Position numbers and translations under genes: made by a program. DNA of 64,000 bases, taken from positions 148,343-212,342 of IMG/VR virus record IMGVR_UViG_3300046170_000378. One strand, written 5' to 3'. Of the stretch, positions 3 to 53,517 are shown one piece after another; positions within the stretch are counted from its first letter, which is position 1; the number at the start of each line of letters is the position of its first letter. The notes beneath the pieces are model-generated. The model made no database searches. It worked only from the letters and a program-made list of their open reading frames with translations, and was not told the origin of the DNA.

Positions 3-1280
3 GCAGACGGTGAAGAGTACGAAAAAGCTGACGATAGAGCAGAAGATAATTCAGACGAATTAGAAGATGAAATCGAAGACGGCGAAGAAGGTGCTAAAGA
101 AGTTACTGAAGACGAAGGTGAAGAAGCTGGCAAAGAAGTTGAAGAAATTGAAGACGACGCAGCTGAAGATCTTGGTGAAGATAAAGCTGAAGAAATCGAA
201 GACGACATCAACGACAAAGGTGAAGTTGAAGATCTAGACGACAAAGTAGAAGATACTCCAGAAGAAGTTGATAATGCTGAAGATCACGTAGGCGAAGATT
301 TAGAAGATGAAGTTTCTGATATTGCTAAAGATGAAATCGAAGATCACGAAGAAGAAATGCACTCTAAAGGTGAAGAAGAAGCTGAAGGTGAAGAAGAAGC
401 TGAAGAAGAAGTTGAAGCTGAAGAAGAAGTTGAAGCTGAAGAAGAAGTTGAAGCTGAAGAAGAAGTTGAAGCTGAAGAAGAAGTTGAAGAAATGACTGAA
501 GACGTTGAAGGTGAAGACGCTGGAGAAGAAGGTGAAGAAGTTGTTAAGAAAGGCGAAGAAGAACTAGACAAAATAGGCGATAACTCAGCTGAAGGTGATG
601 TTGATTCTCACAAAGCTGGTGAAGAAGGCGAAGATCTAGAATCTGATTTAGATAACAGTGATCAAGAAATTCCACCAACAGGTAATACTGACGAAGCAGA
701 ACCTGGTGAAGGCGAAGAAGAAGCTGAAGGCGAAGATGGCGCACAAGATCCATTAGAAGCTTATAAAAGCGAAATCTCTGCAAAACTAAACAATTTGATC
801 GAAACAGCTCAAATTAAAGAAAATGAAAATCCATCTTTCTTTAGAGTCGTATCATCATCTACAATAGAAAAGTATAACGCTCTTAACGAAGACGCTAAAA
901 CAGAAGTTAGATCAGCAGTATCTAAAAGAGGTTTTATGACTGAAAGAGAAATTACTTCTATTATTGAATCATCTCAATTAATCGTTGAGAATAAAAACGC
1001 TGAACCATTTTTCCTAGCGGCTATGCCACTAGAATACAAAGAAACATGGGAAAACTTAAGCGAAGCTAAAAAATCTCAAATTGGTGCACAATCTAAGTAT
1101 CACACTTTAAACACTGAATACCAAGTAAGAAACTTTTGGCAAACTAGAGATCTTAGAGAAACTAAGGTTGATTTAAACAAAGTAGCAATGGTTAACGAAT
1201 CTAAGACAGAAGATAAGCCTTCACTTGGATATGATGCATCTAGCTACGCTGACGCGTTTAAGAAAAGATTCAACAAATAA
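3..1280 (+). CDS. Prohead core/scaffold protein (T4 gp22-like), 5' truncated by window
   Basis: Frame is open from base 3. Very acidic, with (I/L/V)xE-type sites (LNEDA, IIESS, LSEAK, VNESK). Lies immediately upstream of the major capsid gene. Confidence 0.75.
   Translation, partial: ADGEEYEKADDRAEDNSDELEDEIEDGEEGAKEVTEDEGEEAGKEVEEIEDDAAEDLGEDKAEEIEDDINDKGEVEDLDDKVEDTPEEVDNAEDHVGEDLEDEVSDIAKDEIEDHEEEMHSKGEEEAEGEEEAEEEVEAEEEVEAEEEVEAEEEVEAEEEVEEMTEDVEGEDAGEEGEEVVKKGEEELDKIGDNSAEGDVDSHKAGEEGEDLESDLDNSDQEIPPTGNTDEAEPGEGEEEAEGEDGAQDPLEAYKSEISAKLNNLIETAQIKENENPSFFRVVSSSTIEKYNALNEDAKTEVRSAVSKRGFMTEREITSIIESSQLIVENKNAEPFFLAAMPLEYKETWENLSEAKKSQIGAQSKYHTLNTEYQVRNFWQTRDLRETKVDLNKVAMVNESKTEDKPSLGYDASSYADAFKKRFNK
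402..491 (+). repeat. 18-bp coding tandem repeat (EEEVEA x4 + EEEVEE)
   Basis: GAAGAAGAAGTTGAAGCT units read directly. Confidence 0.9.
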
Positions 1281-1384: not shown

Positions 1385-2845
1385 ATGGCAAATTTAATTA
1401 ACGAATCTGAGATCAGAGGTACTTGGGCTCCTATTATTGAGGAAGCAACAGGAATCAATGAATCAGAAAAGCTAGCTTGGATGTCGACTTACTGTCACAA
1501 TCACAAGCTTTATGAAGACGCTCAAATGATGGCGTTAAACCCAGTTTCTCCGGGAACTCAAAACATCGGTGGTATGGGCTCTGTAGTCCTTCCAGATGCA
1601 ACTGCATCTTTCGCAAATCAAAGAGGTTCAGGTGACAAAGCTCCAACTTTATTACCTTTAGCAATGCAAGTTGCTGCTCAAACGATTGCATTAGACTTAG
1701 TACCAGTTGTACCAATGGCAGGTCCTATGGGCTTACTATCTTACTTAGACTTCGTATACGAAGGTGGTAGAATTGACGGTGGTGTTGCTCCAACATTCAT
1801 CAAGTCAGAAGATGCTGACGGTGCTGGTGAAGCAAGCGGTTACAAATTCACTAAATTAGACAAAGCATCAAGAATTGATGGTTTTGCTATCTATGAAGTT
1901 GAAGAAACTGGTGCACACGTTGACGCTAACGGTGCTCCTGTTACTTTACTAGCTGCATTTAGAGCTACTAATGCTGCTGATGATGCTGATATCGAATTAG
2001 TAAAAGCGTTAGAAGACCACATTCCAGGATTCTCTGGTGCTGGTGCATTTAGCGGCGAAGGCGGTGTAAGCAATGTTTATCCAATGTCAAGAGAGACAGG
2101 GGAAAGAACTCCAGACAAATTAATGGGTCTAAGCTTATTCTCTAAGTCAGTTGCTGCTGAAACTTTCCAAGTTGCTGCTGCAGTTACAAGAGAGCAAGTA
2201 CAAGATCTTAAGCAATTCGGTGTTGACGCTGTTGCTCAAGTAGAAGCAGTATTAACTAACGAATTGACTCAGTCTATCAACCAACACATCTTAGCTGAAA
2301 TGAGAAGATTAGCTAAAGAAAATGCTGGTACTGAATTAGCTGCTTCAGTTGATTTCACTACAGCATACGATTTAGGTGGTAACACTTTCGGTGATGTAAA
2401 CAGAAGAGTCCTTACTCACATCTTAGCTCACGCTAACTTCATCGCTAACAAAGGTAGAAGAGGTGCTGGTAACTTTGCAGTTGTTTCTGCAAAAATGGCA
2501 TCAGTTTTACAAGGTGTTGCAGGTTTCGTACCTAACCCAATGGCTAACACAGTTAACCAAGTTGCAGGTGCAATCTATCCATTAGGTTCAGTTGCAGGTA
2601 TCAACATATACACTGACCCTACTCAGAAATTTGAGTCAGGTGACGTATTAGTTGGTAGAAAAGGTGACGGTAACGGTCCTGGTTTAGTATTCATGCCATA
2701 CTTAATGGCTGAATCAGTACAAACTATTGCTGAAGGTACTATGGCTCCAAAGGTAGCTGTAAAATCTAGATACGCATTAGTTGAAGCTGGATTCCACCCA
2801 CAAACTCAATACTCTACGTTCGAGGTTAAGAACATCCAACTATAA
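1385..2845 (+). CDS. gp23: Major capsid protein (T4 gp23-like)
   Basis: PTLLPLAMQVAAQTIALDLVPVVPMAGPMG and FMPYL...PKVAVKSRY match gp23-family motifs; 486 aa, strong codon bias. Confidence 0.92.
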   Translation: MANLINESEIRGTWAPIIEEATGINESEKLAWMSTYCHNHKLYEDAQMMALNPVSPGTQNIGGMGSVVLPDATASFANQRGSGDKAPTLLPLAMQVAAQTIALDLVPVVPMAGPMGLLSYLDFVYEGGRIDGGVAPTFIKSEDADGAGEASGYKFTKLDKASRIDGFAIYEVEETGAHVDANGAPVTLLAAFRATNAADDADIELVKALEDHIPGFSGAGAFSGEGGVSNVYPMSRETGERTPDKLMGLSLFSKSVAAETFQVAAAVTREQVQDLKQFGVDAVAQVEAVLTNELTQSINQHILAEMRRLAKENAGTELAASVDFTTAYDLGGNTFGDVNRRVLTHILAHANFIANKGRRGAGNFAVVSAKMASVLQGVAGFVPNPMANTVNQVAGAIYPLGSVAGINIYTDPTQKFESGDVLVGRKGDGNGPGLVFMPYLMAESVQTIAEGTMAPKVAVKSRYALVEAGFHPQTQYSTFEVKNIQL

Positions 2846-6418: not shown

Positions 6419-6444
6419 AAAATAAGTTAGTATAAATTTTTTAT

Positions 6445-33801: not shown

Positions 33802-33882
33802 TTAAAAATAATTCAGCCCAGATTTTTTTATGTCAAAAAGATTTGGTATATTAGCCTAGTAATAATTAAAAAAAGAAAACAT

Positions 33883-34598: not shown

Positions 34599-34687
34599 GC
34601 CGGAATGGTGGAATTGGTAGACACGAGGGACTTAAAATCCCTTGGGCAGTAATGCCCGTGACGGTTCGAGCCCGTCTTCCGGTACCA
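34599..34687 (+). tRNA. trnL: tRNA-Leu(UAA)
   Basis: Cloverleaf with long variable arm; anticodon loop CTTAAAA; encoded CCA. Confidence 0.93.
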
Positions 34688-34748
34688 AGCAGGGAGTTAT
34701 ACAATACATGTTGGAACTATATAACTTTAAAATAGAACCCTGCGATAT

Positions 34749-34822
34749 GGACCAGTAGCTCAGCTGGATAGAGCATCTGCCTTCTAAGCAGACGGTCACA
34801 GGTTCGAATCCTGTCTGGTTCA
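34749..34822 (+). tRNA. trnR: tRNA-Arg(UCU)
   Basis: Anticodon arm TCTGC-CTTCTAA-GCAGA; no encoded CCA. Confidence 0.93.
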
Positions 34823-34830
34823 CTAAATAT

Positions 34831-34946
34831 GGGGAGTTAGTCAAATAGGTACGACGCTCCAGCTATAAGGCCGAAAACATCATACTAGTTACGAGGTGTG
34901 ATTAGGCTTGTTGGCAGAAGTAGGGGTTCGAATCCCCTACTCCCCC
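34831..34946 (+). ncRNA. tRNA-like RNA with ~45-nt insertion in the anticodon arm
   Basis: Acceptor GGGGAGT/ACTCCCC, D-arm GTC..GAC, T-arm AGGGG-TTCGAAT-CCCCT, long hairpin replacing the anticodon loop. Confidence 0.75.
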
Positions 34947-35047
34947 GCTCTTAGATAGGTTTAACAACCGAACAACGAGGCGTCAAATCTCACGCCTACA
35001 AGTCGAAAGACGGAGTCTAAGTGGAGTAATTTAAATATATAAACCTC

Positions 35048-35135
35048 GGAGAGGTGGCAGAGTGGTCGAATGCACTGGTCTTGAAAACCAGCGTACAGCA
35101 ATGTACCGGGGGTTCGAATCCCTCCCTCTCCGCCA
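35048..35135 (+). tRNA. trnS: tRNA-Ser(UGA)
   Basis: CTGGT-CTTGAAA-ACCAG, long variable arm, CCA. Confidence 0.93.
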
Positions 35136-35137
35136 TT

Positions 35138-35214
35138 GGTCTGGTAGTTCAGTTGGTTAGAATACTTGCCTGTCACGCAAGGGGTCGCGAGTTCGAGTCT
35201 CGTCCAGACCGCCA
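35138..35214 (+). tRNA. trnD: tRNA-Asp(GUC)
   Basis: TTGC-CTGTCAC-GCAA anticodon arm, CCA. Confidence 0.93.
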
Positions 35215-35232
35215 AAAAGAAAGAGAGAGAGT

Positions 35233-35658
35233 ATGAGGTTGTTGGTGGCACTTCTTTTTAGTACAATGATGTGGGCACAAGATTGTTCACCATATCATAA
35301 GGTTGATAAGTGGGAAGTAAATGATGATGTAGATTTTACTGCAGCTTGGGTTAGTTGTTTCCACGCATCTGGCTTAGCGTTTTCAATGGATTATAACAAC
35401 ATCTCTTTAGGAACTCATCTGATGGGCGAAGGCCATATGAATTCTGCATACGTGTTCTTGAGCTATCAATATCAACCACTCGATAGAATTAAATTATCTG
35501 CTGGACCTCTGTATAAATTAAATAACAATAGTGGCTTAATGGTTGCACAATATGGTGGAGATATTAAGTTATATAAATCTATCTGGCTCACGAGTAGAAT
35601 TTTGCAAATTAGAACAGATTTAAATTATCTTAACGTAGGACTTAAAATTGTGCTATAA
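35233..35658 (+). CDS. Hypothetical secreted/outer-membrane-like protein
   Basis: Signal-peptide-like N-terminus, beta-rich sequence. Confidence 0.6.
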   Translation: MRLLVALLFSTMMWAQDCSPYHKVDKWEVNDDVDFTAAWVSCFHASGLAFSMDYNNISLGTHLMGEGHMNSAYVFLSYQYQPLDRIKLSAGPLYKLNNNSGLMVAQYGGDIKLYKSIWLTSRILQIRTDLNYLNVGLKIVL

Positions 35659-35689
35659 TTGGATATATAAAATAAATATATGTCCTTAA

Positions 35690-36148
35690 ATGTCATTCAC
35701 AGAATTCAAAAATAAATTCGGTAACGTTATTTTTACAGTTACTGCTATTGGTGCATTGGTTACATTAATTGGTTACATTAGCCCAATTGTTGACTATGCG
35801 TCTGACCTTAATAAATTAGTTAATGAGTACGAGCAAATTCATAAATCTATGCAGAGAATAGAAACTCACATAGATCAATATGAAAGTGACAGAACTAATA
35901 AGAAGAAAACCTTCTCTATCGGACTTAGATCTGATACTGAAAATGGACAAATGATCTATGTAGATGAGAACAATGGAATCTATAGAGCGTTTCTAGACCC
36001 TAAAACTAAAGAATATTTTTATTATGATTCCGATGGACATCCGGTCTATTGTTATTCACAAAGAAAGGTTAATGGCGAAAAAGATCATATAGAAATTAAG
36101 CCTCTAGTTCTACCTGAAATTATTATCCTTACAGACTCTATCCAATAA
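35690..36148 (+). CDS. Late hypothetical membrane protein (TM + coiled coil)
   Basis: GATATATA at 35662; N-terminal hydrophobic helix. Confidence 0.65.
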   Translation: MSFTEFKNKFGNVIFTVTAIGALVTLIGYISPIVDYASDLNKLVNEYEQIHKSMQRIETHIDQYESDRTNKKKTFSIGLRSDTENGQMIYVDENNGIYRAFLDPKTKEYFYYDSDGHPVYCYSQRKVNGEKDHIEIKPLVLPEIIILTDSIQ

Positions 36149-36203
36149 ATCAAATGAAACAGTATTATACTGTATTGTATAAGTATTGGCTGTCAGTCAA
36201 GCT

Positions 36204-36328
36204 TTAGAGAGGTAGTGAAGCTGTAGTTAAGAAGTAGAGTGTATTAATTGTCGAAAAAGGGTTTATAGTAGACAGGCGTTACTCATTGCACTTAACCAGA
36301 AACCCCGAAAGACCCGAAGCCTCTCTAA
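36204..36328 (+). ncRNA. Candidate structured RNA with pseudoknot
   Basis: Closing stem TTAGAGAGG/CCTCTCTAA; crossing helices GTTAAG/CTTAAC and GGGTTT/AAACCC. Confidence 0.45.
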
Positions 36329-36331
36329 TTT

Positions 36332-36403
36332 GCTCCGTTCGTCTAACGGTTAGGACATTAGGTTTTCATCCTAAAAATAGGAGTTCGATTCTCCTACGGA
36401 GTA
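36332..36403 (+). tRNA. trnE: tRNA-Glu(UUC)
   Basis: TTAGG-TTTTCAT-CCTAA; no CCA. Confidence 0.9.
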
Positions 36404-36435
36404 CAATTATATAGCAAGTTTATATAAGTAAACAA

Positions 36436-36508
36436 TGTCCCTTGGTGTAATTGGCAACACGTCTGGTTTTGGTCCAGAAGAGTATAGGTTCGACCCCTGT
36501 AGGGACAA
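36436..36508 (+). tRNA. trnQ: tRNA-Gln(UUG)
   Basis: TCTGG-TTTTGGT-CCAGA; no CCA. Confidence 0.9.
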
Positions 36509-36516
36509 CAATTTTT

Positions 36517-36591
36517 CGGGGTGTAGCGTAGCCCGGTTATCGCGCCACGTTTGGGACGTGGAGGCCGCAGGTTCGAATCCTGCCACCCCGA
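36517..36591 (+). tRNA. trnP: tRNA-Pro(UGG)
   Basis: CCACG-TTTGGGA-CGTGG; no CCA. Confidence 0.92.
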
Positions 36592-36745
36592 CATTTTAAC
36601 ACCATTTCACTGAAACCTTTCAAATCAGCTTAATATAACTATCAAATCTAACAAACCTAGATTTTAAAAGTTATTTGACTTGCTAAACAAATAGATCATA
36701 GATCGAGTCTTGCACCTCTACATAGATTATAGGTGTTTTCAACAT

Positions 36746-36822
36746 GGGGATGTAGCTCAGTTGGTTAGAGCAGGACTCTTATATAGTCAAGGTCGTGGGT
36801 TCGAGCCCCGCCATCCCTACCA
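36746..36822 (+). tRNA. trnI: tRNA-Ile(UAU)
   Basis: GACT-CTTATAT-AGTC anticodon arm, canonical D and T arms, CCA. Confidence 0.85.
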
Positions 36823-36843
36823 AAGGCAACTATGATTTATTAA

Positions 36844-36916
36844 GATCTCTTAGCTCAGTTGGTAGAGCATCACACTTTTAATGTGAGGGTCCAGGGTTCG
36901 AGCCCCTGAGGGATCA
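36844..36916 (+). tRNA. trnK: tRNA-Lys(UUU)
   Basis: TCACA-CTTTTAA-TGTGA; no CCA. Confidence 0.92.
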
Positions 36917-36919
36917 CTT

Positions 36920-37001
36920 GCGGATGTGGTGAAATTGGTAGACACGCTAGTTTTAGGCACTAGTGCTTTATAGCTTGAAGGTTCGAGTCCTTTCATCCGC
37001 A
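36920..37001 (+). tRNA. trnL: tRNA-Leu(UAG)
   Basis: CTAGT-TTTAGGC-ACTAG, variable arm; no CCA. Confidence 0.9.
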
Positions 37002-37023
37002 CGTGTCATGCAAGCGCAAAAGA

Positions 37024-37058
37024 CGGGGTCCCAAACAAAAGACAAGTTTGGGGCCCCG
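37024..37058 (+). terminator. 13-bp GC-rich hairpin closing the tRNA array
   Basis: CGGGGTCCCAAAC / GTTTGGGGCCCCG; lacks a U-tract. Confidence 0.5.
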
Positions 37059-37096
37059 GTAAGAATGATATATAGTATGTAAAATAAACTATTGTT

Positions 37097-38236
37097 ATGC
37101 AAAAATTTAGTAACTTTATGCTTCTTAGAGAAGCTGAAACCAAACTTAAAGTTAATGTACCTTCGGATATATTAGACTTATACAATCTTTTCAAAAAGAA
37201 TGGTAAAGAATTGTATGTGGTTGGTGGTGCAGTACGAGATGCATTATTAGGTAAAAAACCAAAAGACTTTGATTTGGCTACTGACGCATTTCCTGCAGAA
37301 GTTATTGATATTGTTACTAAAGGAGGTTATTCAACAACAGGTGAAGTTGGACACCAATTTGGTGTAGTTATTGTAAACGTACCTTCTGATCCAGCGGGTG
37401 TTGAGATTGCTACTTTTAGAGAAGACATTGGAAAGGGTAGAAGACCAGATGCAGTTGAGTATTCTACTATTGATAAAGATGTACTAAGACGAGATTTAAC
37501 AATCAATGCACTGTTCTATGATATGGGCAGACAAGAGGTTGTTGATTTAGTTGGTGGTTTGGATGATATAAAAAATTCAAAGATTAGAACTGTAGGTGTT
37601 GCAGCTGATAGATTCGCTGAAGATCCTTTAAGAAAACTAAGAGCTTTAAGATTTGCTGGTAGAACTGGATCAAACTTAGAAGAAGAAACTGCTAATGCCA
37701 TTTTAACAGATAATAGTTTAGAAGGTATTAGTGCAGAGAGAATTAGAGATGAGTTTAAAAAATCTATAGTTTCTGCTAAGTCCGCTAAGAAGTACTTAGA
37801 GATGGTCTCTGAATTCAACCTGTGGTCTGTTATGTTTCCTACATTAGAGATCAATAAAAAATTCATAGACACCAATACTTGGCTTGTTCAATTGGGTACA
37901 CTGTTTATTGCCAATGAACATAAAAAAGAAATGAACAAACTTACATTTACCAATGATGAGATTGATGCATGTATTTTCTTAAAGAGAATCATGGCGTTCG
38001 ATGTAAATGACGTGTTTGATTTACATAAGCAATTTAAAAACACCAACATGGACAAGAAAGAAGTTCTTGAATTTGCAAAAATACACAAATTAGATATTAA
38101 AACCTTGAAGGCGTTCTTTAAATATAAACCAACTACTAATGGTAAGGATGTAATGAAAGAGTTCGGCATCAAAGGACCAGAAGTTGCAATAAAGATAAAA
38201 CAAATAGAATCAGATAAATTTAAAAAGACTATTTAA
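37097..38236 (+). CDS. cca: CCA-adding enzyme / tRNA nucleotidyltransferase (class II)
   Basis: YVVGGAVRDALLGKKPKDFDLAT, EIATFR, RRDLTINAL, EDPLRKLRALRF; adjacent to tRNAs lacking CCA. Confidence 0.9.
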   Translation: MQKFSNFMLLREAETKLKVNVPSDILDLYNLFKKNGKELYVVGGAVRDALLGKKPKDFDLATDAFPAEVIDIVTKGGYSTTGEVGHQFGVVIVNVPSDPAGVEIATFREDIGKGRRPDAVEYSTIDKDVLRRDLTINALFYDMGRQEVVDLVGGLDDIKNSKIRTVGVAADRFAEDPLRKLRALRFAGRTGSNLEEETANAILTDNSLEGISAERIRDEFKKSIVSAKSAKKYLEMVSEFNLWSVMFPTLEINKKFIDTNTWLVQLGTLFIANEHKKEMNKLTFTNDEIDACIFLKRIMAFDVNDVFDLHKQFKNTNMDKKEVLEFAKIHKLDIKTLKAFFKYKPTTNGKDVMKEFGIKGPEVAIKIKQIESDKFKKTI

Positions 38237-38622
38237 TGGAATTAATTTCAACACACCCTGTTAAAAAATCAGATTTAGGTTTTCATGGTAATCTTTTCGG
38301 TGGTAAATTATTAGCATGGGTAGATGCAGCTGGCGCATCTTACGCATCTCAGGTATGTGATACGCCAAGAATGGTAACAGTACTTATTGACGAGTGTGTA
38401 TTTAAGAAACCTGCAAAAGAAGGACATTTACTTAAAATTTACGGAGAAGTAGAAACCATAGGTAGAACTTCAGTAATATTAAAGGTTGAGGCTAGATCAC
38501 ATAATGTGTATGATGGAAGGCAAGCTATTATTCTTGCTACAAATATTAAATTTGTTAGAATAGATGAACAAGGGGAAGCAATTCCTATTAGTCAAAGGGT
38601 AAAAGATAAATTTAAGAAATAA
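38236..38622 (+). CDS. Acyl-CoA thioesterase (HotDog, YciA-like)
   Basis: HGNLFGGKLLAWVDAAG, IGRTS..LKVE, FVRID..G..IP. Confidence 0.85.
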   Translation: MELISTHPVKKSDLGFHGNLFGGKLLAWVDAAGASYASQVCDTPRMVTVLIDECVFKKPAKEGHLLKIYGEVETIGRTSVILKVEARSHNVYDGRQAIILATNIKFVRIDEQGEAIPISQRVKDKFKK

Positions 38623-38836
38623 GAGTAATATATACTAGCCATAGTTATTTTAGCCATGGAAAGTAAGAAACAATAATAGCAATGAATAACGAGCAACAAA
38701 ACGGTAACACTCAGTTAAATCAAGACAGAAACGCTTTCAATCAGAAAGTAAGTAAACTATCTATGTTAGGCAGAACTAAGAAAGTTCAATGGTCTAATAG
38801 ACGTAGATGGAGAAACGTGTAAACACATAAAATCTT

Positions 38837-39430
38837 ATGGAATTTTTATTAAACGTCTTAACGGTGTTTTTAACACTGTTCGCTGTCATAGATATGCCAG
38901 GAAACGTACCTTTGATTATTAAGCTACGTAAAGAAAATGGTGAAATAGAATCTCTAAAATCTACAATAATAGCCACGGTTATTATGGTCTCAATTCTATT
39001 TGTAGGGCAAACTTTATTTAGACTTTTGGGAATTGAAACATTTCACTTTGCATTGGCAGGCGCGATGCTTCTCCTATATTTCGGTGTTAAGATGGTACTA
39101 GGGATAGAATCAGAATCTAATTCAGAACCAATGCCAGCAACTATATTTCCAATAGCATTTCCAATTATAGCAGGACCAGGAACCTTATCAACTATCATGT
39201 CACTGACTCAAGATTTAAGTAATATTGAAATTATTTTGGGTATTATATTGAATGCTATAATGATTTACATATTCTTAAAGACAGCACCTTGGATTCAAAA
39301 CAAATTAGGCGTTGTTGGAATTACTATTATGGAGAGAGTCTTTGGAATCTTACTAGTTGCCATTGGAATGAAAATACTAATCAATTCTTTGGTACTAAGT
39401 GTTGTTGCAGCTCAATCAGCGATAGGCTAA
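38837..39430 (+). CDS. marC: MarC family integral membrane protein
   Basis: LFAVIDMPGNVP, GIETFHFALAG, FPIAFPIIAGPG, ERVFGILL. Confidence 0.88.
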   Translation: MEFLLNVLTVFLTLFAVIDMPGNVPLIIKLRKENGEIESLKSTIIATVIMVSILFVGQTLFRLLGIETFHFALAGAMLLLYFGVKMVLGIESESNSEPMPATIFPIAFPIIAGPGTLSTIMSLTQDLSNIEIILGIILNAIMIYIFLKTAPWIQNKLGVVGITIMERVFGILLVAIGMKILINSLVLSVVAAQSAIG

Positions 39431-39577
39431 ATAATGGCCAATGTAAATACAAGTACCATAATTACTACGTAAAGTACTTTAGATATGTCAATTCTTTTTT
39501 CCATGTAATATTTATTTGAAAGCTACAGTGGAAACAAGATTCGGCACATTAATTAATTGTTAAGCAATTATTAAATG

Positions 39578-39946
39578 TTAGTACAGTATTTGTTTAGGAT
39601 ATTTTTCAAATAAGATATATCCGGATCTAATTCTAGCATCTACGTGAGGAGTAGCGTAGTCAACTATTTCTACTATTTTAGATAATTCCACATTGTCTTC
39701 ACCTTCTAATTTAGGATTATCAAAATAAGCATATCTGTTTTTATCAAAAACCTTTTGCATAATAATCCACTTGGAGATAAAGTAATCCATCTCATCTTTA
39801 AGCCTTTCTAAATGTAAAAGATGTGGAGAAACTTTCTTGCTAAGGTAAGATTTATCAACCGATTCCAAATAAGCATATAAAACATATTGCTTATGTTCAA
39901 AATCAACTGGAGCTTGAGAATACCAATCTAAATCTAATAGCTTCAT
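39578..39946 (-). CDS. Late hypothetical protein
   Basis: ORF track; minus-strand GATATATA at 39951-39958. Confidence 0.65.
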   Translation of the reverse strand: MKLLDLDWYSQAPVDFEHKQYVLYAYLESVDKSYLSKKVSPHLLHLERLKDEMDYFISKWIIMQKVFDKNRYAYFDNPKLEGEDNVELSKIVEIVDYATPHVDARIRSGYILFEKYPKQILY

Positions 39947-39958
39947 AATTTATATATC

Positions 39959-39985
39959 AAAAAAAAGAGGGCCGAAGCCCTCTTT
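39959..39985 (-). terminator. Terminator for the minus-strand operon
   Basis: AAAGAGGGC-CGAA-GCCCTCTTT hairpin; the A-run reads as a U-tract on the minus strand. Confidence 0.8.
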
Positions 39986-39986
39986 C

Positions 39987-40259
39987 TTATTGTCCATGTA
40001 CTTCACTTTTTACAATGAAGATATATTCACCAGGTCGTTCGGGATCTGGTTTGAAATCAATATCAATTATTTCATAATTAAATACTAATCTCATTGTCTC
40101 TCCTGGTTTTGCTCTCATAGTCCATGTTGTACCATAAGGATTTGCAAAATAATCTAGAATATCCACATCAGTATTAAAGTAGCGTGGAGATTTGATCTCT
40201 GAATAGTTAGCGCAACCAAATAGAGTTGCGAAGCATAAAAAAGTAAATAGTTTTTTCAT
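39987..40259 (-). CDS. Putative lipoprotein
   Basis: MKKLF...LFGC lipobox-like N-terminus. Confidence 0.6.
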   Translation of the reverse strand: MKKLFTFLCFATLFGCANYSEIKSPRYFNTDVDILDYFANPYGTTWTMRAKPGETMRLVFNYEIIDIDFKPDPERPGEYIFIVKSEVHGQ

Positions 40260-40273
40260 AATTAATTTTGTTT

Positions 40274-42073
40274 TTATCTAAATATGGTTATATGTCCGGA
40301 TCTTTGGTAAACTTCTGGAGAATTCCATTTACGTGCATAGAATGTATATGTGTAAACACCGTCTGAAACATAGCTCGGTCCATTATTAACACTTCCATTC
40401 CAATATGGATATGAATCAAAATCATCACCATATCCATGATAAATCTCACTACCCCATCTGTTAAAGACCCTAAACTCAACATCGACCCAGCAATTTAGAT
40501 CATAGATCATTTTCCATACATCGTTGATGCCATCGTTGTTAGGTGTAAATGTATTAGGTATAAAAACGGTCCATGGCCAGCATTCTTGCATACCGGGATC
40601 ATCAACACATGGCATACCGGTTTCGCAATCTACAGGAATGAACTCAGTTATAGTGTCTGTTAAATACACATACTCTACGACATCAATAAATGTGGTGTCA
40701 TATTGAGTTACATATAATGTATCAGTTATGAACACAGGAACCTCTACCTCAACAGTGTCTATCACATCAATATAAATAGTATCAGTTATGAACACAGGAA
40801 CCTCTACCTCAACGGTGTCTATTATGTTTACATAAACAGTATCGGTTATTGTTATCGTTTCATATTCACATGAACCATCGTCTTCTTCTGCATTTGGGTC
40901 AAAGTTAATTGCACATATATCTGTGCATCCTACTTCTGGCTCACACAGTGGAACAGGCGGTAAGTTCACAACAGTAGTGTTATTACCAGTAACTATTTCG
41001 TCATTAACAGTATTAACTTCTATTACAAATAATCCACCTTCAGACCAACCTTCTGGAAATACAAACTGTCCAGTATTAAATGTTTGACCTTCACCTGGCG
41101 GTATTTGTAAAATCATACTATCTCCACTATCATAACAAAACGTCGCGTCGGGATGCCAAAGTTCTACACAATATGTGTTCATATCAATGTCACCAGAATT
41201 AGTTATAGTAAATTGAACTTGATAATATGGATTTCCAGAGGCATCACAGCCGGTTATGAATTCAACATTTCCGGCTACTTGTGCATCTGTTGAGCCTTCA
41301 GGTGGATAGACACAGCTACCATCATCTTCAGTTGCATTTGGTTCATAATTTAATGCATCGGGATCGGTACAACCTGGAATAACAACAGTTTCGCAAATGA
41401 AATCTTCACCCTGGATCATTGCAGGTCCAGGATTGTCTTCTCTACAAACTGACCATGAATTATCACAATCCATATCTGGATATATTTGCACATTTGAAAG
41501 TGGCTGTTGTCCATCGTCATTAGCACCTAATTCAGCCCAACCTCCACCTGGGGCGTTAGGGCCATCATTTTGATACCATGAGTTTGAATAGTTTATTTGC
41601 CAAATAACAAACTCTACACATTCTCCTTGATCTAGCCAATAATCAATTACTGGAGCAGCACAGCAGCCTATTGCTGGAGAACCATCACAATTACCATTAC
41701 TTGGATTATCTAGCTCTACAACAAAGGTATCTCCAGTGTACAGTGGAAATTCTGAACTAGCATAATTTGATGGAAAATCAGAAGCTGATGGACCATACCA
41801 CCAACCAGGATGATTAGAAGTTGGTGCCATAAAACATGGACCATCGTCGTCTACATCGACAGCTTCATTTTGACCAGGAATATGAAAGCCAATCATTACC
41901 ATATTGACATGATCATTACTTCCATTATATCCAGTAGCTCCGCAGCCCTCGCCGTTAATGACTTCAACTGTAACTTCATAAGTATTTAAATTTACATCTG
42001 TAATTGCCAAATCACATTGACCTGAAATCACAAATACATGAAAAAACGTAAGTAAAAATAATAATCTTTTCAT
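40274..42073 (-). CDS. Secreted protein with T9SS type-B (gliding-motility-associated CHU_C) C-terminal domain
   Basis: Signal peptide; GCTDPDALNY..ATEDDGSC repeats; ITDT.Y repeats with a 60-bp duplication; IPNTFTPNNDGINDVW..VFNRWG..WNG..DGVYTY. Confidence 0.85.
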   Translation of the reverse strand: MKRLLFLLTFFHVFVISGQCDLAITDVNLNTYEVTVEVINGEGCGATGYNGSNDHVNMVMIGFHIPGQNEAVDVDDDGPCFMAPTSNHPGWWYGPSASDFPSNYASSEFPLYTGDTFVVELDNPSNGNCDGSPAIGCCAAPVIDYWLDQGECVEFVIWQINYSNSWYQNDGPNAPGGGWAELGANDDGQQPLSNVQIYPDMDCDNSWSVCREDNPGPAMIQGEDFICETVVIPGCTDPDALNYEPNATEDDGSCVYPPEGSTDAQVAGNVEFITGCDASGNPYYQVQFTITNSGDIDMNTYCVELWHPDATFCYDSGDSMILQIPPGEGQTFNTGQFVFPEGWSEGGLFVIEVNTVNDEIVTGNNTTVVNLPPVPLCEPEVGCTDICAINFDPNAEEDDGSCEYETITITDTVYVNIIDTVEVEVPVFITDTIYIDVIDTVEVEVPVFITDTLYVTQYDTTFIDVVEYVYLTDTITEFIPVDCETGMPCVDDPGMQECWPWTVFIPNTFTPNNDGINDVWKMIYDLNCWVDVEFRVFNRWGSEIYHGYGDDFDSYPYWNGSVNNGPSYVSDGVYTYTFYARKWNSPEVYQRSGHITIFR

Positions 42074-43345
42074 TATCTAATAAATATTTTTCTAGTAATA
42101 ACAATACCACCGATGTATTCTTCTACCTGAATATAAAATCCTGGAGTTAGATCACCATACTCAGAGTATGTTCTACCTAATATGTCCACCCATTTTACTT
42201 CAACTATGTCATCATCTAAGTTTCTCACTAAATTTTTAAGATTACCTGATTCAATCATACCCGCATCTCCAGTATCACATTCAGTACCATAATTGACTAA
42301 AAATAAAGTAAGATCATTAACATCTACGACTCCGTCATAGTTAAAATCTGCAGGCAAACATGCTCCGGTTTGGGTGTGCCACGTCAAATAATCTAAAAAG
42401 TCATTGATATTAATATATCCGTTTCCGTCTAAATCCCATGGACAATTACCTAAATCACATCCACTACATTCATTATTAATAGCTGCAGTTCTACCCAATT
42501 CTAATTGAGCGTGCATTCTATTAATTTGACCAGGAGTAAATAAATCTTGACAATTATCAGGCGCATATGACATATAAGATTCGTCGACCTCATCTATATC
42601 TGGACAAGCATCTTGACACGACCAATCAATTGCAGTTGGGGGCGTATCACAAACCCTATCACCTTCAAGTTCACAATCAACTTCGTTAAGAGCAGTAGGT
42701 ACAAGAATAGTTGTTACCGAATAAGTCTCTAGAAAAAGTGTGAGATAATCCACACCAGTGTCCAGCCTCATGTGTAAATGTTTTAGAATCAGAATCTACT
42801 ACTTCTGTAGCTCTAACCCAAACACCAACATTAGCAGGTGGAAGAGCAGTAAATCCTAAAATTCCACCACTCCATTCACCAATGTAGACTTCCATAATGT
42901 CACCGGTGTTTTCACCTATTTCATTTTGAACTTGATTATAACAATATATTGGGTTACTACACCACGAAGATAATTCCGATTCTTCATAAAACCTAACATC
43001 CTCCAAACAAAAAGAAATATCAGTGTTATTGATTTCAAATTGTTCATTTAGATAATCAAATTCATTTTGAATGTCTAATTCAGTAAAATCATACGTGCTT
43101 TGAATAACGTGTATAATTGTAGGAATTGTTTTAAGTGTATTTTGTTGTCTCGCTAACTTTTTTTCTACAGCGTCCTGTAGAGCAAAGAAGGATCTAGCGA
43201 ACTTCTCATCTTTGAGCTCTTCGCTAGTAGTTATAGCTTGCCCACATTTCTCAACGTGATGTAAGCTCTTTTGTGCAATGGCAGTATTAATAGTCAATAG
43301 ACATACCACGGCACTCATAAAAACAGATAGTTTTTTGAGTTGCAT
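42073..43345 (-). CDS. M43 (pappalysin-like) zinc metalloprotease with dockerin/EF-hand repeats and T9SS type-A-like tail, +1 indel at ~42699
   Basis: THEAGHWCGLSHTF, GDRVCDTPP, YMSY...FTPGQ..RM, DLDGNGYININD, C-terminal VDILGR..GFYI..TRKI. Confidence 0.8.
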
Positions 43346-49899: not shown

Positions 49900-50730
49900 A
49901 TGGAGAAAGTAAAACTCTTTGAAGATTTCACTGCTAATACAAAAACATATGTCTTTGTTGGTGATATTATGCAACACCCCGAACAGATCAATTATGAATT
50001 AGATCATAACTTTTCTTATAGTGGAGTTTTTGATGAGGTTTTATTTTTATTCAAAGGCGCTGACATGGTTCTAGGAAATCTAGAAACTACAATTTCTAAG
50101 TCTATCGATACAGACGTTGAGGATAGAACAGGAAAATTCAAAGCGCATCCTAATTTTTTAAAAGCTCTCTTGCAAGCCGGATTTTCACACTTAGCCACAG
50201 AAAACAATCACATGCTAGATTTTAAAGAAGATGGTTATAAAGAAACTTTAAAATTAATTCAAGAAGCTGGTTTAATTCCAATTAATAAAAACTCGCAAGA
50301 AATTCTAAATTTCACAACACACATTAACGGTCAAGATAGATTATCATTAGAACAAATTAAGGAATTAATCAAATCATCTAATGACACTTCAGGTATTGCA
50401 TACATTCATTGGGGTGATCAATATAATACAAAACCAACGAACGAACAAATAGAAGTTGCTGAACTTTTACGAGAAGCAGGGTATCCAATCATTATCGGTT
50501 CAGGTACACACACTTACAATGCCACGGTGTATGACGGTAATCTTATAGCTTATTCTCTGGGTGATTTTTTATCTGATCATCAAGCACCAAATACGACAGA
50601 CGTTGGAAAAATACTTGTTGTTAAGACTACTGAAGATAGAGTAACTAAAGTAAAGGAGTATTATACGACTACGAACACAGATCAAGGTAAAAGCAAAATC
50701 GTTATTACGGATTCTAAAGTAATTTTATAA
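49900..50730 (+). CDS. CapA/PGA_cap-family metallophosphoesterase-like protein
   Basis: VGDIM, GNLET, ENNHMLDF, IHWG, IIGSGTH, AYSLGDF. Confidence 0.8.
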   Translation: MEKVKLFEDFTANTKTYVFVGDIMQHPEQINYELDHNFSYSGVFDEVLFLFKGADMVLGNLETTISKSIDTDVEDRTGKFKAHPNFLKALLQAGFSHLATENNHMLDFKEDGYKETLKLIQEAGLIPINKNSQEILNFTTHINGQDRLSLEQIKELIKSSNDTSGIAYIHWGDQYNTKPTNEQIEVAELLREAGYPIIIGSGTHTYNATVYDGNLIAYSLGDFLSDHQAPNTTDVGKILVVKTTEDRVTKVKEYYTTTNTDQGKSKIVITDSKVIL

Positions 50731-52929: not shown

Positions 52930-53003
52930 GGGGGATTAGCTCAGCTGGCTAGAGCGCCTGCCTTGCACGCAGGAGGTCATCAGTTCGACTCTGATATTCT
53001 CCA
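52930..53003 (+). tRNA. trnA: tRNA-Ala(UGC)
   Basis: CCTGC-CTTGCAC-GCAGG; G3:U70 pair; no CCA. Confidence 0.93.
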
Positions 53004-53029
53004 CTGAAGACACAGTTCTTTGAAATATT

Positions 53030-53430
53030 GGGAAGGCACATTTGATACTGATCATTGATGATGTGAGTGTATTGCCGAAAAAATCCTGACGGAAAGAGGG
53101 ATTAAGGCACACCAGACACCGAACACGTTTCGGCTTAGTTGCAGAAGTGAGTAACTAAGACTTGGCAAAGTAGATGGTGGTAGATCGAGAAAGATAACAT
53201 AAACTAATCTTTCTAGGAGCATTGCAAGTACCCGAGAGGAAATCTTGCCCAAGTGACCGAATATCCTGTCTTATTAGGGGATAAGGTACAATCAAAGCCG
53301 TTGCGGCGCTACAACGAGATTAACCATCTTGAGTAGAACTTGAAATAATAGTAAAGTTGATTGGTATGCAGTAATCATTACAATAAGTCGATCTTCTAGA
53401 GCTGGTATACTCTAGTACACGATCCTTCCT
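53030..53430 (+). ncRNA. Candidate ~400-nt highly structured noncoding RNA
   Basis: No + strand ORF of 60 aa or more; closing stem GGGAAGG/CCTTCCT; at least 7 internal helices; flanked by tRNAs. Confidence 0.6.
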
Positions 53431-53441
53431 TTTTTTATTAA

Positions 53442-53517
53442 GCGAAAGTAGCTCAGCTGGTAGAGCATGACCTTGCCAAGGTCAGGGTCGCCGGTTCGAA
53501 CCCGGTCTTTCGCTCCA
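53442..53517 (+). tRNA. trnG: tRNA-Gly(GCC)
   Basis: TGACC-TTGCCAA-GGTCA; CCA. Confidence 0.93.

What the first reader, a model, noticed from the sequence alone, without database searches (positions are those of the whole stretch)
37067..38236. Late-expressed CCA-adding enzyme with a capsid-targeting-like N-terminus: possibly an injected tRNA-repair enzyme
Seen: cca follows the GATATATA late motif rather than the motif that precedes the tRNAs, and begins MQKFSNFMLLREAE. Seven of 12 tRNAs lack encoded CCA, and all seven encode only C74. Known: the T4 internal-protein capsid-targeting sequence is MKTYQEFIAE and is cleaved by gp21 after Glu. Inference: the enzyme is packaged and delivered with the DNA to mature phage tRNAs or repair host tRNA 3' ends damaged by defence nucleases.
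Basis: inference. Interest (0 to 1): 0.7.

Follow-up and report, generated by a model that had tools for sequence, protein, structure and literature searches.

The report
Phage CCA-adding enzyme with removable leader
A T4-like giant marine phage encodes a tRNA CCA-adding enzyme behind a late promoter, and its short floppy N-terminal leader ends in the cut site of the phage's head protease, so the enzyme may be packed into the capsid and delivered with the DNA; this is still unproven.

Summary
Window 37097-38236 encodes a 379-aa class II tRNA nucleotidyltransferase whose model best matches solved CCA-adding enzymes. GATATATA lies 30 nt upstream. That motif occurs 38 times on the + strand and 2 on the - strand, mostly in intergenic DNA, and it precedes the portal, protease-scaffold, capsid, sheath, tube and fibre genes. 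Seven of the 12 tRNAs end A73-C74 followed by a non-C.

The window is the end of a 212-kb T4-like phage record. It has a gp21-type protease, a gp23-type capsid protein and a gp55-like late sigma factor. Its nearest cultured relatives infect Bacteroidota.

For packaging:
- Residues 1-11 are modelled as disordered.
- Cellular homologues lack the leader.
- 57 of 117 distinct leaders of phage homologues carry [LIVMF]xE[AGS], against about 8 expected.
- About ten other late proteins of this phage start with T4-CTS-like leaders.
- In relatives the cca domain sits in polyproteins with the same motif at domain junctions.

Against:
- An HMM built from this phage's leaders does not recognise the cca leader.
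- Four relatives also have an early-type promoter.
- No virion data exist.

Verdict: the packaging reading is partly supported, at about 0.45. It would be a new variant of known kinds.

The parts
37067..37074 (+). GATATATA, a late-promoter-like motif 30 nt upstream of the cca start
   Evidence: 38 copies on the + strand against 2 on the - strand; 30 of 38 intergenic. It precedes the structural genes. A gp55-like late sigma factor is present. Close relatives carry [GA]ATA[TA]ATA exactly 12 nt before their cca ATG.
37097..38236 (+). cca: class II tRNA nucleotidyltransferase, 379 aa
   Evidence: PF01743 (2.4e-32) plus PF12627; phrog_2244. AF2 mean pLDDT 93.6. The best Foldseek matches are solved CCA-adding enzymes at TM 0.71-0.73, against 0.55 for E. 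coli poly(A) polymerase.
37097..37132 (+). N-terminal leader MQKFSNFMLLRE, with a putative cut after Glu12 (L-R-E|A)
   Evidence: Residues 1-11 have pLDDT below 50 and no secondary structure. E12 and A13 are invariant in 15 close homologues. Cellular homologues lack the leader. The motif is enriched in phage homologues.
37024..37058 (+). 13-bp G+C-rich hairpin between tRNA-Leu(tag) and the late motif; a possible terminator or processing site
   Evidence: The 73-nt stretch 37003-37075 that holds it folds at -30.1 kcal/mol, z = -5.7 against shuffles. No T-run follows the hairpin.
34599..37002 (+). tRNA cluster: 10 tRNAs and one tRNA-like gene. Arg, Glu, Gln, Pro, Lys and Leu-tag end A73-C74 without C75-A76
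52930..53517 (+). tRNA-Ala (A73-C74 only) and tRNA-Gly (CCA encoded), separated by a 437-nt non-coding spacer
33812..33857 (+). Early-type promoter consensus upstream of the ORF that precedes the tRNA cluster
   Evidence: PWM score 53.8; 14-15 copies in the genome
38236..38622 (+). 4HBT-type thioesterase whose start overlaps the cca stop (TAATG); probably co-transcribed; carries no leader
   Evidence: PF03061 at 4.6e-16; sequence
3..1280 (+). C-terminal part of the 820-aa protease-scaffold fusion (genome 147160-149622). The protease domain lies just upstream of the window
   Evidence: PF03420 at 7.4e-13. The residues aligned with T4 gp21 His85 and Ser140 are conserved. It contains repeated (L/V/I)AE(K/S) motifs and an acidic tract.
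1385..2845 (+). gp23-type major capsid protein. Its N-terminus, MANLINE|S, carries a phi-x-E-[AS] motif that is conserved in the clade
   Evidence: PF07068 at 3e-46; alignment with relatives and T4
49900..50730 (+). One of the other leader-bearing late genes inside the window (MEKVKLFEDF..., with AATATATA-N4-ATG)

Best explanation
The gene encodes a CCA-adding, or at least C75-A76-adding, tRNA nucleotidyltransferase. It belongs to a T4-like jumbo phage of marine Bacteroidota and sits next to a tRNA cluster in which 7 of 12 genes template only A73-C74.

Its first roughly 12 residues (MQKFSNFMLLRE) are a disordered, phage-specific leader. I think this leader most likely works like the T4 capsid-targeting sequence and propeptide. 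On that reading the enzyme is made from a gp55-type late promoter and carried into the prohead core. The phage's gp21-type protease then trims it after Glu12 (L-R-E|A), and it is delivered with the DNA into the next cell. There it completes the 3' ends of phage tRNAs and rebuilds damaged tRNA 3' ends.

Shown here:
- the identity and fold of the enzyme;
- the late-type motif;
- the T4-type head module;
- the leader's disorder and its absence from cellular homologues;
- the family-wide enrichment of the phi-x-E-[AGS] motif;
- CTS-like leaders on other late proteins of this phage;
- polyprotein forms in relatives.

Inferred: targeting, cleavage, packaging, injection, and the tRNA substrates after injection.
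For: (1) T4-type head machinery is present: Peptidase_S77 with the residues aligned to T4 gp21 His85 and Ser140 conserved, a Gp23 capsid protein, and a gp55-like late sigma factor.

(2) GATATATA behaves as the late promoter and stands 30 nt before cca. In 8 close relatives a [GA]ATA[TA]ATA box lies exactly 12 nt before the cca ATG. Six leader-bearing genes of this phage have the same 'leaderless late' layout.

(3) A permissive CTS pattern matches T4 ipII and ipIII, and none of the other 45 T4 proteins sampled, ipI included. The same pattern matches 11 of 295 N-termini here against 2.3 expected (P = 2.5e-5), and cca is one of them. The others include two ATP-grasp enzymes, a GNAT and g142. A gp67-like acidic protein (g187) between the portal and protease genes carries a similar leader; it matches the stricter pattern and the leader HMM.

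(4) Leaders are conserved at the peptide level and differ by synonymous changes.

(5) AF2 gives residues 1-11 pLDDT below 50, and the fold begins at about residue 13. Homologues without a leader start close to the predicted cut.

(6) 57 of 117 distinct N-extensions of phage homologues carry [LIVMF]xE[AGS], against 7.9 +/- 2.6 in shuffles. The baseline in this phage's own proteome is 7.9%. Cellular homologues give 4 of 54 against 4.8 expected.

(7) Eight of nine near-complete records with a close cca homologue have the S77 protease and Gp23.

(8) In relatives, cca is one domain of 600-1300-aa polyproteins (CTP_transf_like-X-cca-g142-like, AAA_33-cca, HAD-like-cca) with LINE|A or LLRE|A-type motifs at domain junctions. 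In this phage the same domains are separate genes, each with its own leader.
Against: - An HMM built from 11 leaders of this phage ranks the window's cca leader 138th of 251 (score -0.3). Only some homologues' leaders score: P0196 at 14 bits and P0021 at 11 bits. The resemblance therefore rests on a permissive pattern.
- E12-A13 are conserved together with the next ten residues (EAxxxLKxNVP), which the model places at the edge of the fold with pLDDT about 69. The motif could be structural.
- Four relatives also have an early-type promoter just upstream of cca. Here the tRNA cluster is separated from cca only by a hairpin, and RNA-library contigs span the promoter. Expression need not be late only.
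- The capsid protein's own cut site could not be located.
- There are no virion proteomics. The nearest cultured relative, PTm1, has no cca.
- My literature searches found no report of a virion-borne CCA-adding enzyme.
Confidence: 0.45

Rival explanations
1. This is an ordinary cytoplasmic phage CCA-adding enzyme. It is made in the infected cell, by read-through from the tRNA operon and from the late promoter, to mature the seven CCA-less phage tRNAs and keep tRNA 3' ends intact late in infection. The N-terminal extension has another role, such as stability, translation of weakly led mRNAs, or a contact with tRNA or a partner. It is neither cut nor packaged.
For: Phage CCA-adding enzymes are common and are generally read as tRNA maturation or repair enzymes (PMC7824862; 507 phage records hit). 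The tag HMM does not pick out this leader. Early-type promoters stand upstream of cca in four relatives. RNA-library contigs cross the promoter. E12-A13 are conserved together with adjacent residues of the fold.
Against: It does not explain why phi-x-E-[AGS] is about seven-fold enriched in otherwise dissimilar leaders of phage homologues but not in cellular ones. It does not explain why the leader is disordered and dispensable in many homologues. It does not explain why the same motif marks junctions in front of unrelated domains in polyproteins.
Confidence: 0.38
2. The leader is a propeptide cut by the phage protease, or a handle for binding the scaffold, but it does not serve delivery. For example, it might keep the enzyme inactive or sequestered until head assembly, or it might be a remnant of a polyprotein junction after gene fission.
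For: Polyprotein relatives carry the same motif at junctions. The window's leader is two residues shorter than in relatives that are 93-94% identical, and it is a poor match to the tag profile. Both points would suit a decaying remnant.
Against: F7, E12 and A13 are invariant in 15 homologues down to 70% identity, and similar leaders occur across the 40-50% identity range. That argues for selection on the leader. T4-type proteases are known to act inside the prohead (established knowledge of T4 gp21).
Confidence: 0.12
3. The enzyme is a poly(A) polymerase or other non-CCA nucleotidyltransferase that acts on RNAs other than tRNA 3' ends.
For: The top NCBIfam hit by E-value is the pcnB subfamily TIGR01942 (182 bits, residues 31-252). 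The stretch LGKKPKDFD resembles PcnB as I recall it.
Against: The TIGR01942 and PcnB equivalog cut-offs are missed by a wide margin (182 against 305.65; 123.9 against 702). The Bacillus-type CCA model aligns over the full length, residues 32-371. Structure matches favour CCA-adding enzymes, TM 0.71-0.73 against 0.55. Motifs A, B (RRD), D (EDPLR) and E are all present. The gene abuts CCA-less tRNA genes.
Confidence: 0.05

Closest known systems
Bacterial class II CCA-adding enzymes (Bacillus/Planococcus type; PDB 1MIV, 6QY6)
   Same: They share the head, neck, body and tail fold (TM 0.71-0.73) and motifs A-E, and they align over the full length with NF009814.
   Different: Sequence identity is only 25-28% and the score is below the equivalog cut-off (179.8 against 290). 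The phage enzyme also has an extra disordered leader of about 12 residues.
T4 internal proteins IPI-III and Alt (capsid-targeting sequence, cut by gp21)
   Same: Late expression; a short N-terminal leader with an aromatic-x-x-Phe core and a phi-x-E cut motif 10-20 residues in; a gp21-type protease in the same genome; in the case of Alt, an enzyme as cargo (T4 biology from PMC3012670 and established knowledge).
   Different: The leader sequence differs (MQKFSNFMLLRE against MKTYQEFIAE). The cargo is a tRNA-processing enzyme. Neither packaging nor cleavage has been shown here.
Phage-encoded tRNA nucleotidyltransferases of jumbo and T4-like phages (phrog_2244)
   Same: The same enzyme family, and linkage to phage tRNA genes. 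They are read in the literature as tRNA 3'-end repair enzymes.
   Different: Cultured-phage homologues align only from about residue 20-40 onward. I found no report that treats any of them as a virion component.
Ejection proteins of giant phages (phiKZ, SPN3US) processed by a prohead protease
   Same: Many enzymes and unknown proteins are packed in the head and cut at x-E-type sites by a T4-related protease (PMC5694885, PMC7411985 and PMC10052503, as listed).
   Different: It is a different phage lineage with a different cut motif context, and no CCA-adding enzyme is reported among those proteins.
T4 Pnkp/Rnl tRNA repair
   Same: In relatives cca is fused to an AAA_33 kinase-like domain, a HAD-like domain or, by my reading of the sequence (Pfam gave no HD match for the fusions tested), an HD-like domain. 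These resemble end-healing modules.
   Different: Those T4 enzymes repair anticodon-loop breaks and are not packaged. No ligase is seen next to cca here.

Membership tests
Class II tRNA nucleotidyltransferase (CCA-adding enzyme) | PolyA_pol head domain with motif A (GGxVRD ... DxD) | tested here: met
   PF01743 at 2.4e-32; GGAVRD at residues 43-48 and DFD at 57-59; G43, R47, D48, D57 and D59 are invariant in 78 homologues.
Class II tRNA nucleotidyltransferase (CCA-adding enzyme) | Motif B (RRD), motif D (EDxxR nucleotide template) and motif E (ERxxxE) | tested here: met
   RRD at 131-133, EDPLR at 175-179 and ERIRDE at 214-219, all conserved. Motif names come from established knowledge of class II enzymes.
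Class II tRNA nucleotidyltransferase (CCA-adding enzyme) | Full-length head-neck-body-tail fold like solved CCA-adding enzymes | tested here: met
   Foldseek: 6qxn at TM 0.73, and 6qy6 and 1miv at TM 0.71, all over about 370-390 columns.
Class II tRNA nucleotidyltransferase (CCA-adding enzyme) | Score above NCBIfam's curated equivalog cut-off | tested here: not met
   NF009814 scores 179.8 bits against a cut-off of 290. It is a divergent phage clade, not an equivalog of the Bacillus enzyme.
Class II tRNA nucleotidyltransferase (CCA-adding enzyme) | Adds C75 and A76 (or CCA) to tRNA and then stops | not testable with these tools
   Needs an enzyme assay on tRNA ending A73-C74.
Poly(A) polymerase I (PcnB) | Score above the curated PcnB cut-offs and a PcnB-type C-terminal region | tested here: not met
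   TIGR01942 scores 182 against 305.65 and NF008634 scores 123.9 against 702, and only residues 12-252 align. TM to 3AQL is 0.56.
T4-type capsid-targeted, protease-processed head proteins | The phage has a gp21-type prohead protease and a scaffold | tested here: met
   PF03420 at 7.4e-13. The catalytic His and Ser align with T4 gp21. The protease is fused to a coiled-coil and acidic scaffold carrying repeated phi-A-E sites.
T4-type capsid-targeted, protease-processed head proteins | N-terminal leader shared with other head or late proteins of the same phage | tested here: inconclusive
   The permissive pattern groups cca with 10 other N-termini (P = 2.5e-5) and is specific on T4 controls. An HMM of the leaders does not recognise the window's cca leader (rank 138 of 251).
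T4-type capsid-targeted, protease-processed head proteins | phi-x-E cut motif about 10-20 residues from the N-terminus, ahead of the folded domain | tested here: met
   L10-R11-E12|A13. Residues 1-11 are disordered. The motif occurs in 57 of 117 homologue leaders against 7.9 expected.
T4-type capsid-targeted, protease-processed head proteins | Late transcription | tested here: inconclusive
   A late-type motif is present and conserved. Early-type promoters also occur in four relatives, and the RNA contigs were uninformative.
T4-type capsid-targeted, protease-processed head proteins | Present in virions in processed form | not testable with these tools
   No isolate or proteome is available. 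PTm1, the nearest cultured relative, lacks cca.

The most novel reading that the evidence does not exclude
T4-like jumbo phages of Bacteroidota may use a short CTS-like leader and their gp21-type protease to load a whole kit of enzymes into the capsid. The kit would include the CCA-adding enzyme, cytidylyltransferase-like and g142-like proteins, Pnk-like kinase and HAD or HD end-healing domains, ATP-grasp ligases and a GNAT. In some lineages these would be loaded as one polyprotein cut at phi-x-E|[AGS] junctions, in others as separate genes each with its own leader. The injected kit would repair or complete tRNA 3' ends before any phage gene is expressed, which would pre-empt tRNA-targeting defences.
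Probability: 0.3. Interest if true: 0.8.

Novelty: new variant of a known kind. Interest (0 to 1): 0.62.

Why it matters
Phage CCA-adding enzymes are usually read as helpers for phage tRNAs or as repair enzymes made after infection. If this one is packed in the capsid and injected, it would be the first tRNA-processing enzyme known to travel with phage DNA. It would be active before transcription starts, at the moment when tRNA-cleaving defences strike.

The wider pattern points to a large cargo system in a widespread marine phage group that nobody has described. That pattern consists of many late enzymes with CTS-like leaders, and of polyprotein versions with protease-type junctions. It also gives a simple sequence rule for predicting packaged proteins in uncultured T4-like phages.

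Separately, the A73-C74-only tRNA genes (7 of 7 here, and most tRNAs next to cca in distant relatives) are an unexplained regularity in tRNA 3'-end processing.

Tried and rejected
- **Complex prediction.** I folded the protease-scaffold (residues 1-375) with cca residues 1-45. The tool returned no answer, so this is evidence neither for nor against binding.
- **Read laying.** The second, over 37003-39500 with four RNA-library runs, gave only low-depth contigs (3-6x). Some cross the hairpin and the late motif, and there are no 5'-end pile-ups. DNA carry-over cannot be excluded, so timing and transcript start stay open.
- **Cultured relatives.** Tenacibaculum phage PTm1, the nearest by capsid protein at 35% identity, has neither cca nor a g142 homologue. 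No published virion proteome can therefore be used.
- **Literature.** I found no report of a virion-borne tRNA nucleotidyltransferase.
- **Tag HMM.** It separates about 14 N-termini of this phage but does not include the window's cca.
- **Capsid protein cut site.** The T4 LTE|A position is conserved in three more T4-like relatives but not in this clade. Only a short N-terminal LINE[AS] is conserved here, so the protease's specificity could not be read from the capsid protein.
- **Association test.** I could not test leader presence against a T4-type head module, because nearly all complete records with close homologues are T4-like.
- **Strict first pattern.** My first strict pattern found only cca itself; the family appeared only on reading all N-termini. 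The later patterns are therefore post hoc.
- **Poly(A) polymerase.** Considered and rejected as unlikely.
Full report
**What is there**

The window is the last 64 kb of a 212,342-bp virus record. The record is linear, about 76% complete and 34.6% G+C. The ORF at 37097-38236 encodes 379 aa starting MQKFSNFMLLREAE. It carries the PolyA_pol head domain (PF01743, 2.4e-32) and the RNA-binding domain PF12627, and it matches phrog_2244, 'tRNA nucleotidyltransferase'.

All class II motifs are present and conserved in 78 homologues: GGAVRD...DFD, RRD, EDPLR and ERIRDE. An AlphaFold2 model has mean pLDDT 93.6. Its best PDB matches are bona fide CCA-adding enzymes (6qxn, 6qy6, 1miv, 4x4w; TM 0.66-0.73), whereas E. 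coli poly(A) polymerase gives TM 0.55.

NCBIfam's Bacillus-type CCA model aligns over residues 32-371, but below its equivalog cut-off. The PcnB models align only with the head and neck and fall far below their cut-offs. I therefore read it as a divergent CCA-type enzyme of a phage clade, not a poly(A) polymerase. Its activity remains untested.

**The phage**

The genome has a T4-type head module:
- a Peptidase_S77 protease, with the residues aligned to T4 gp21 His85 and Ser140 conserved;
- the protease is fused to an 820-aa scaffold that carries repeated (L/V/I)-A-E-(K/S) motifs and a long acidic tract;
- a gp23-type capsid protein and a portal protein;
- a gp55-like late sigma factor.

By capsid protein, the nearest cultured relatives are Tenacibaculum phages PTm1 and PTm5 and the Lak phages of Prevotella. 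A marine Bacteroidota host is therefore likely. Homologues 70-94% identical to cca are abundant in seawater metagenomes.

GATATATA at 37067-37074 lies 30 nt before the ATG. In the genome it occurs 38 times on the + strand and twice on the - strand. Thirty of the 38 are intergenic, mostly 12-40 nt before a start codon. It precedes the portal, protease-scaffold, capsid, sheath, tube and a tail fibre gene. It therefore behaves as the late promoter, analogous to T4's TATAAATA.

A different 46-nt consensus (GCCCAGATTTTTTTATGTCAAATATTTGTGGTATATTAGTAG) has 14-15 copies and precedes small genes. One copy lies at 33812-33857, one ORF upstream of the tRNA cluster.

Of the 12 ARAGORN tRNAs, five encode CCA and seven end A73-C74 followed by a non-C. 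Seven out of seven has a chance of about 4e-6. In more distant relatives, tRNAs next to cca also end N73-C74 followed by A or T in 10 of the 12 that lack CCA. T4's own CCA-less tRNAs do not follow this rule. All parts of the observation are confirmed.

**Is the N-terminus a capsid-targeting leader?**

Several independent lines fit that reading.

(a) The model gives residues 1-11 pLDDT below 50 and no secondary structure. The fold starts at about residue 13.

(b) In 15 homologues down to 70% identity, the first 11 residues vary but F7, E12 and A13 are invariant.

(c) At 40-50% identity, homologues either start directly at the first helix or carry dissimilar leaders that again end in phi-x-E-[AGS]. 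Examples are MKIKSFYEFVNES, MRFKNYDTFVNES and MKTQIKQILREG. Overall 57 of 117 distinct leaders carry the motif, against 7.9 +/- 2.6 in shuffles. The baseline for the first 22 residues of this phage's own proteins is 7.9%.

(d) Cellular homologues, the best 80 at 30-45% identity, have unrelated N-termini and show no enrichment: 4 of 54 against 4.8 expected.

(e) Reading all N-termini of the genome shows a family of T4-CTS-like leaders. Examples are MKYLKLFEQFLLE, MKYLKLFEQFVNE, MKHLKSLKEFLNE, MKHIKAYESFVNE, MKIKDFQTFINE, MKIYTNFNTFLTE, MKKFEEFIGE, MKTFNKYLVE and MKVIKTIEAFAKE.
- A pattern written for them matches T4 ipII and ipIII and none of the other 45 T4 proteins sampled, ipI included.
- Here it matches 11 of 295 N-termini against 2.3 expected, and cca is one of them.
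- The bearers include two ATP-grasp enzymes, a GNAT, the g141-g144 late operon and g187, an acidic protein in the gp67/68 position between portal and protease; g187 and g141 match the leader HMM rather than this pattern.
- Six of them have the late box exactly 4 nt before the ATG.
- Identical peptides are encoded with synonymous differences.

(f) In eight close relatives cca itself has this 'box-N4-ATG' layout.

(g) In other T4-like relatives cca is one domain of polyproteins:
- CTP_transf_like-X-cca-g142-like, 1205 and 1302 aa;
- CTP_transf-like-HAD-like-cca, 995 aa;
- AAA_33-cca, 621 aa.

These have LINE|A, LLRE|A or ILE|G-type motifs in front of each domain. In this phage the homologous domains are separate genes (g143, g142 and cca), each with its own leader.

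(h) Eight of nine near-complete records with a close homologue have the S77 protease and Gp23.

**What weakens it**

- The patterns were written after seeing the data.
- A profile HMM of 11 leaders recovers g55, g190 and g129, but it ranks the window's cca leader 138th of 251. Leaders of some cca homologues do score: P0196 at 14 bits, and P0021, a relative about 86% identical, at 11 bits. The window's copy is two residues shorter than in its closest relatives.
- E12-A13 are conserved together with the next ten residues, which the model places at the edge of the fold, so a structural role cannot be excluded.
- Four relatives have an early-type promoter immediately upstream of the late box.
- In the window only a strong hairpin separates cca from the tRNA operon. 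The hairpin lies at 37024-37058, and the 73-nt stretch containing it folds at -30.1 kcal/mol, z = -5.7.
- RNA-library contigs cross that region at low depth. Expression may be both early and late.
- The capsid protein's own cut site could not be located.
- The complex prediction gave no answer.
- No virion proteome exists for any phage carrying this enzyme.

**Mechanism and verdict**

The most likely reading (about 0.45) has four steps:
1. cca is made late, perhaps also early.
2. Its leader takes it into the prohead core.
3. The gp21-type protease removes residues 1-12.
4. The mature enzyme, starting at Ala13, is delivered with the DNA. It then adds C75-A76 to the phage's A73-C74 tRNAs and rebuilds damaged 3' ends.

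The fusions with kinase-like, HAD-like and (by my reading of the sequence, not by Pfam) HD-like domains in relatives give indirect support for an end-repair role. That role agrees with the general view of phage CCA-adding enzymes (PMC7824862).

The main rival (about 0.38) is an ordinary cytoplasmic enzyme whose leader has another function. A propeptide or polyprotein remnant without delivery has about 0.12. A poly(A) polymerase has about 0.05.

**Novelty**

The enzyme family, its linkage to phage tRNA genes, the T4 CTS and prohead-protease processing are all known. A CCA-adding enzyme carrying such a leader is, as far as my searches reach, undescribed. So is the wider set of leader-bearing late enzymes and polyproteins in this phage group.

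I rate it a new variant of known kinds. It is of good interest because it is directly testable by virion proteomics and a simple protease assay.

Noticed in passing
window 34831-34946: A 13th tRNA-like gene that ARAGORN's default run misses. Rfam scores it as tRNA at 42.5 bits. With introns allowed, ARAGORN calls it tRNA-Val(tac) with a 27-nt insert in the anticodon arm and a long extra arm. It has no CCA.
   Followed up: partly
window 3925-4140: A 15-nt unit (AAGACTGACGACACC) repeated about 14 times in tandem at and beyond the 3' end of the ORF that follows the capsid gene. The repeat runs past the predicted stop. I did not translate it or work out its reading frame.
   Followed up: no
genome-wide; in the window at 6426, 24257, 25646, 33510, 33812, 45556, 47040, 48553: A highly conserved 46-nt early-type promoter (GCCCAGATTTTTTTATGTCAAATATTTGTGGTATATTAGTAG) stands in front of small genes. 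It has a TGnTATATT extended -10 box.
   Followed up: partly
genome 41838, 42869, 45799, 55507, 105634, 106688; window 49900: 'Leaderless late' genes: a [GA]ATATATA box exactly 4 nt before the ATG. Nearly all of them encode proteins with T4-CTS-like N-termini. They include two ATP-grasp enzymes and a GNAT.
   Followed up: partly
genome 147160-149622 (window 3-1280 is its C-terminal part): The prohead protease is fused to the scaffold in one 820-aa protein, with repeated (L/V/I)AE(K/S) motifs and an acidic tract of about 350 aa. PTm1 has a similar fusion, annotated as such.
   Followed up: partly
loci L038, L043, L048, L045, L030, L059: In related T4-like phages cca is fused to cytidylyltransferase-like, HAD-like (DUF2608), AAA_33 kinase-like and g142-like domains in proteins of 600-1300 aa. 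L030 and L059 also carry what I read as an HD-type stretch; those two were not scanned against Pfam.
   Followed up: partly
window 38818-39427: Contigs from two RNA libraries, 90-95% alike, join 38818 directly to 39427. They therefore lack the MarC-family membrane protein gene (38837-39430). The gene appears to be an insertion that varies among relatives.
   Followed up: no
window 39578-43345, minus strand: A block of genes on the opposite strand, with reversed GC skew. It includes a 599-aa protein whose C-terminus looks to me like a Bacteroidota T9SS sorting domain. That is a reading from memory: PHROGs gave no hit and Pfam was not run.
   Followed up: no
window 53005-53441: A 437-nt spacer between tRNA-Ala and tRNA-Gly has no ORF of 90 aa or more and no Rfam family at gathering score. 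A partial early-type -10 box (TGGTATAC) lies 39 nt before tRNA-Gly.
   Followed up: no
loci L037, L060, L080: In distant relatives, tRNA genes next to cca also template only N73-C74, usually followed by AA. The C74-only rule is wider than this phage and remains unexplained.
   Followed up: partly
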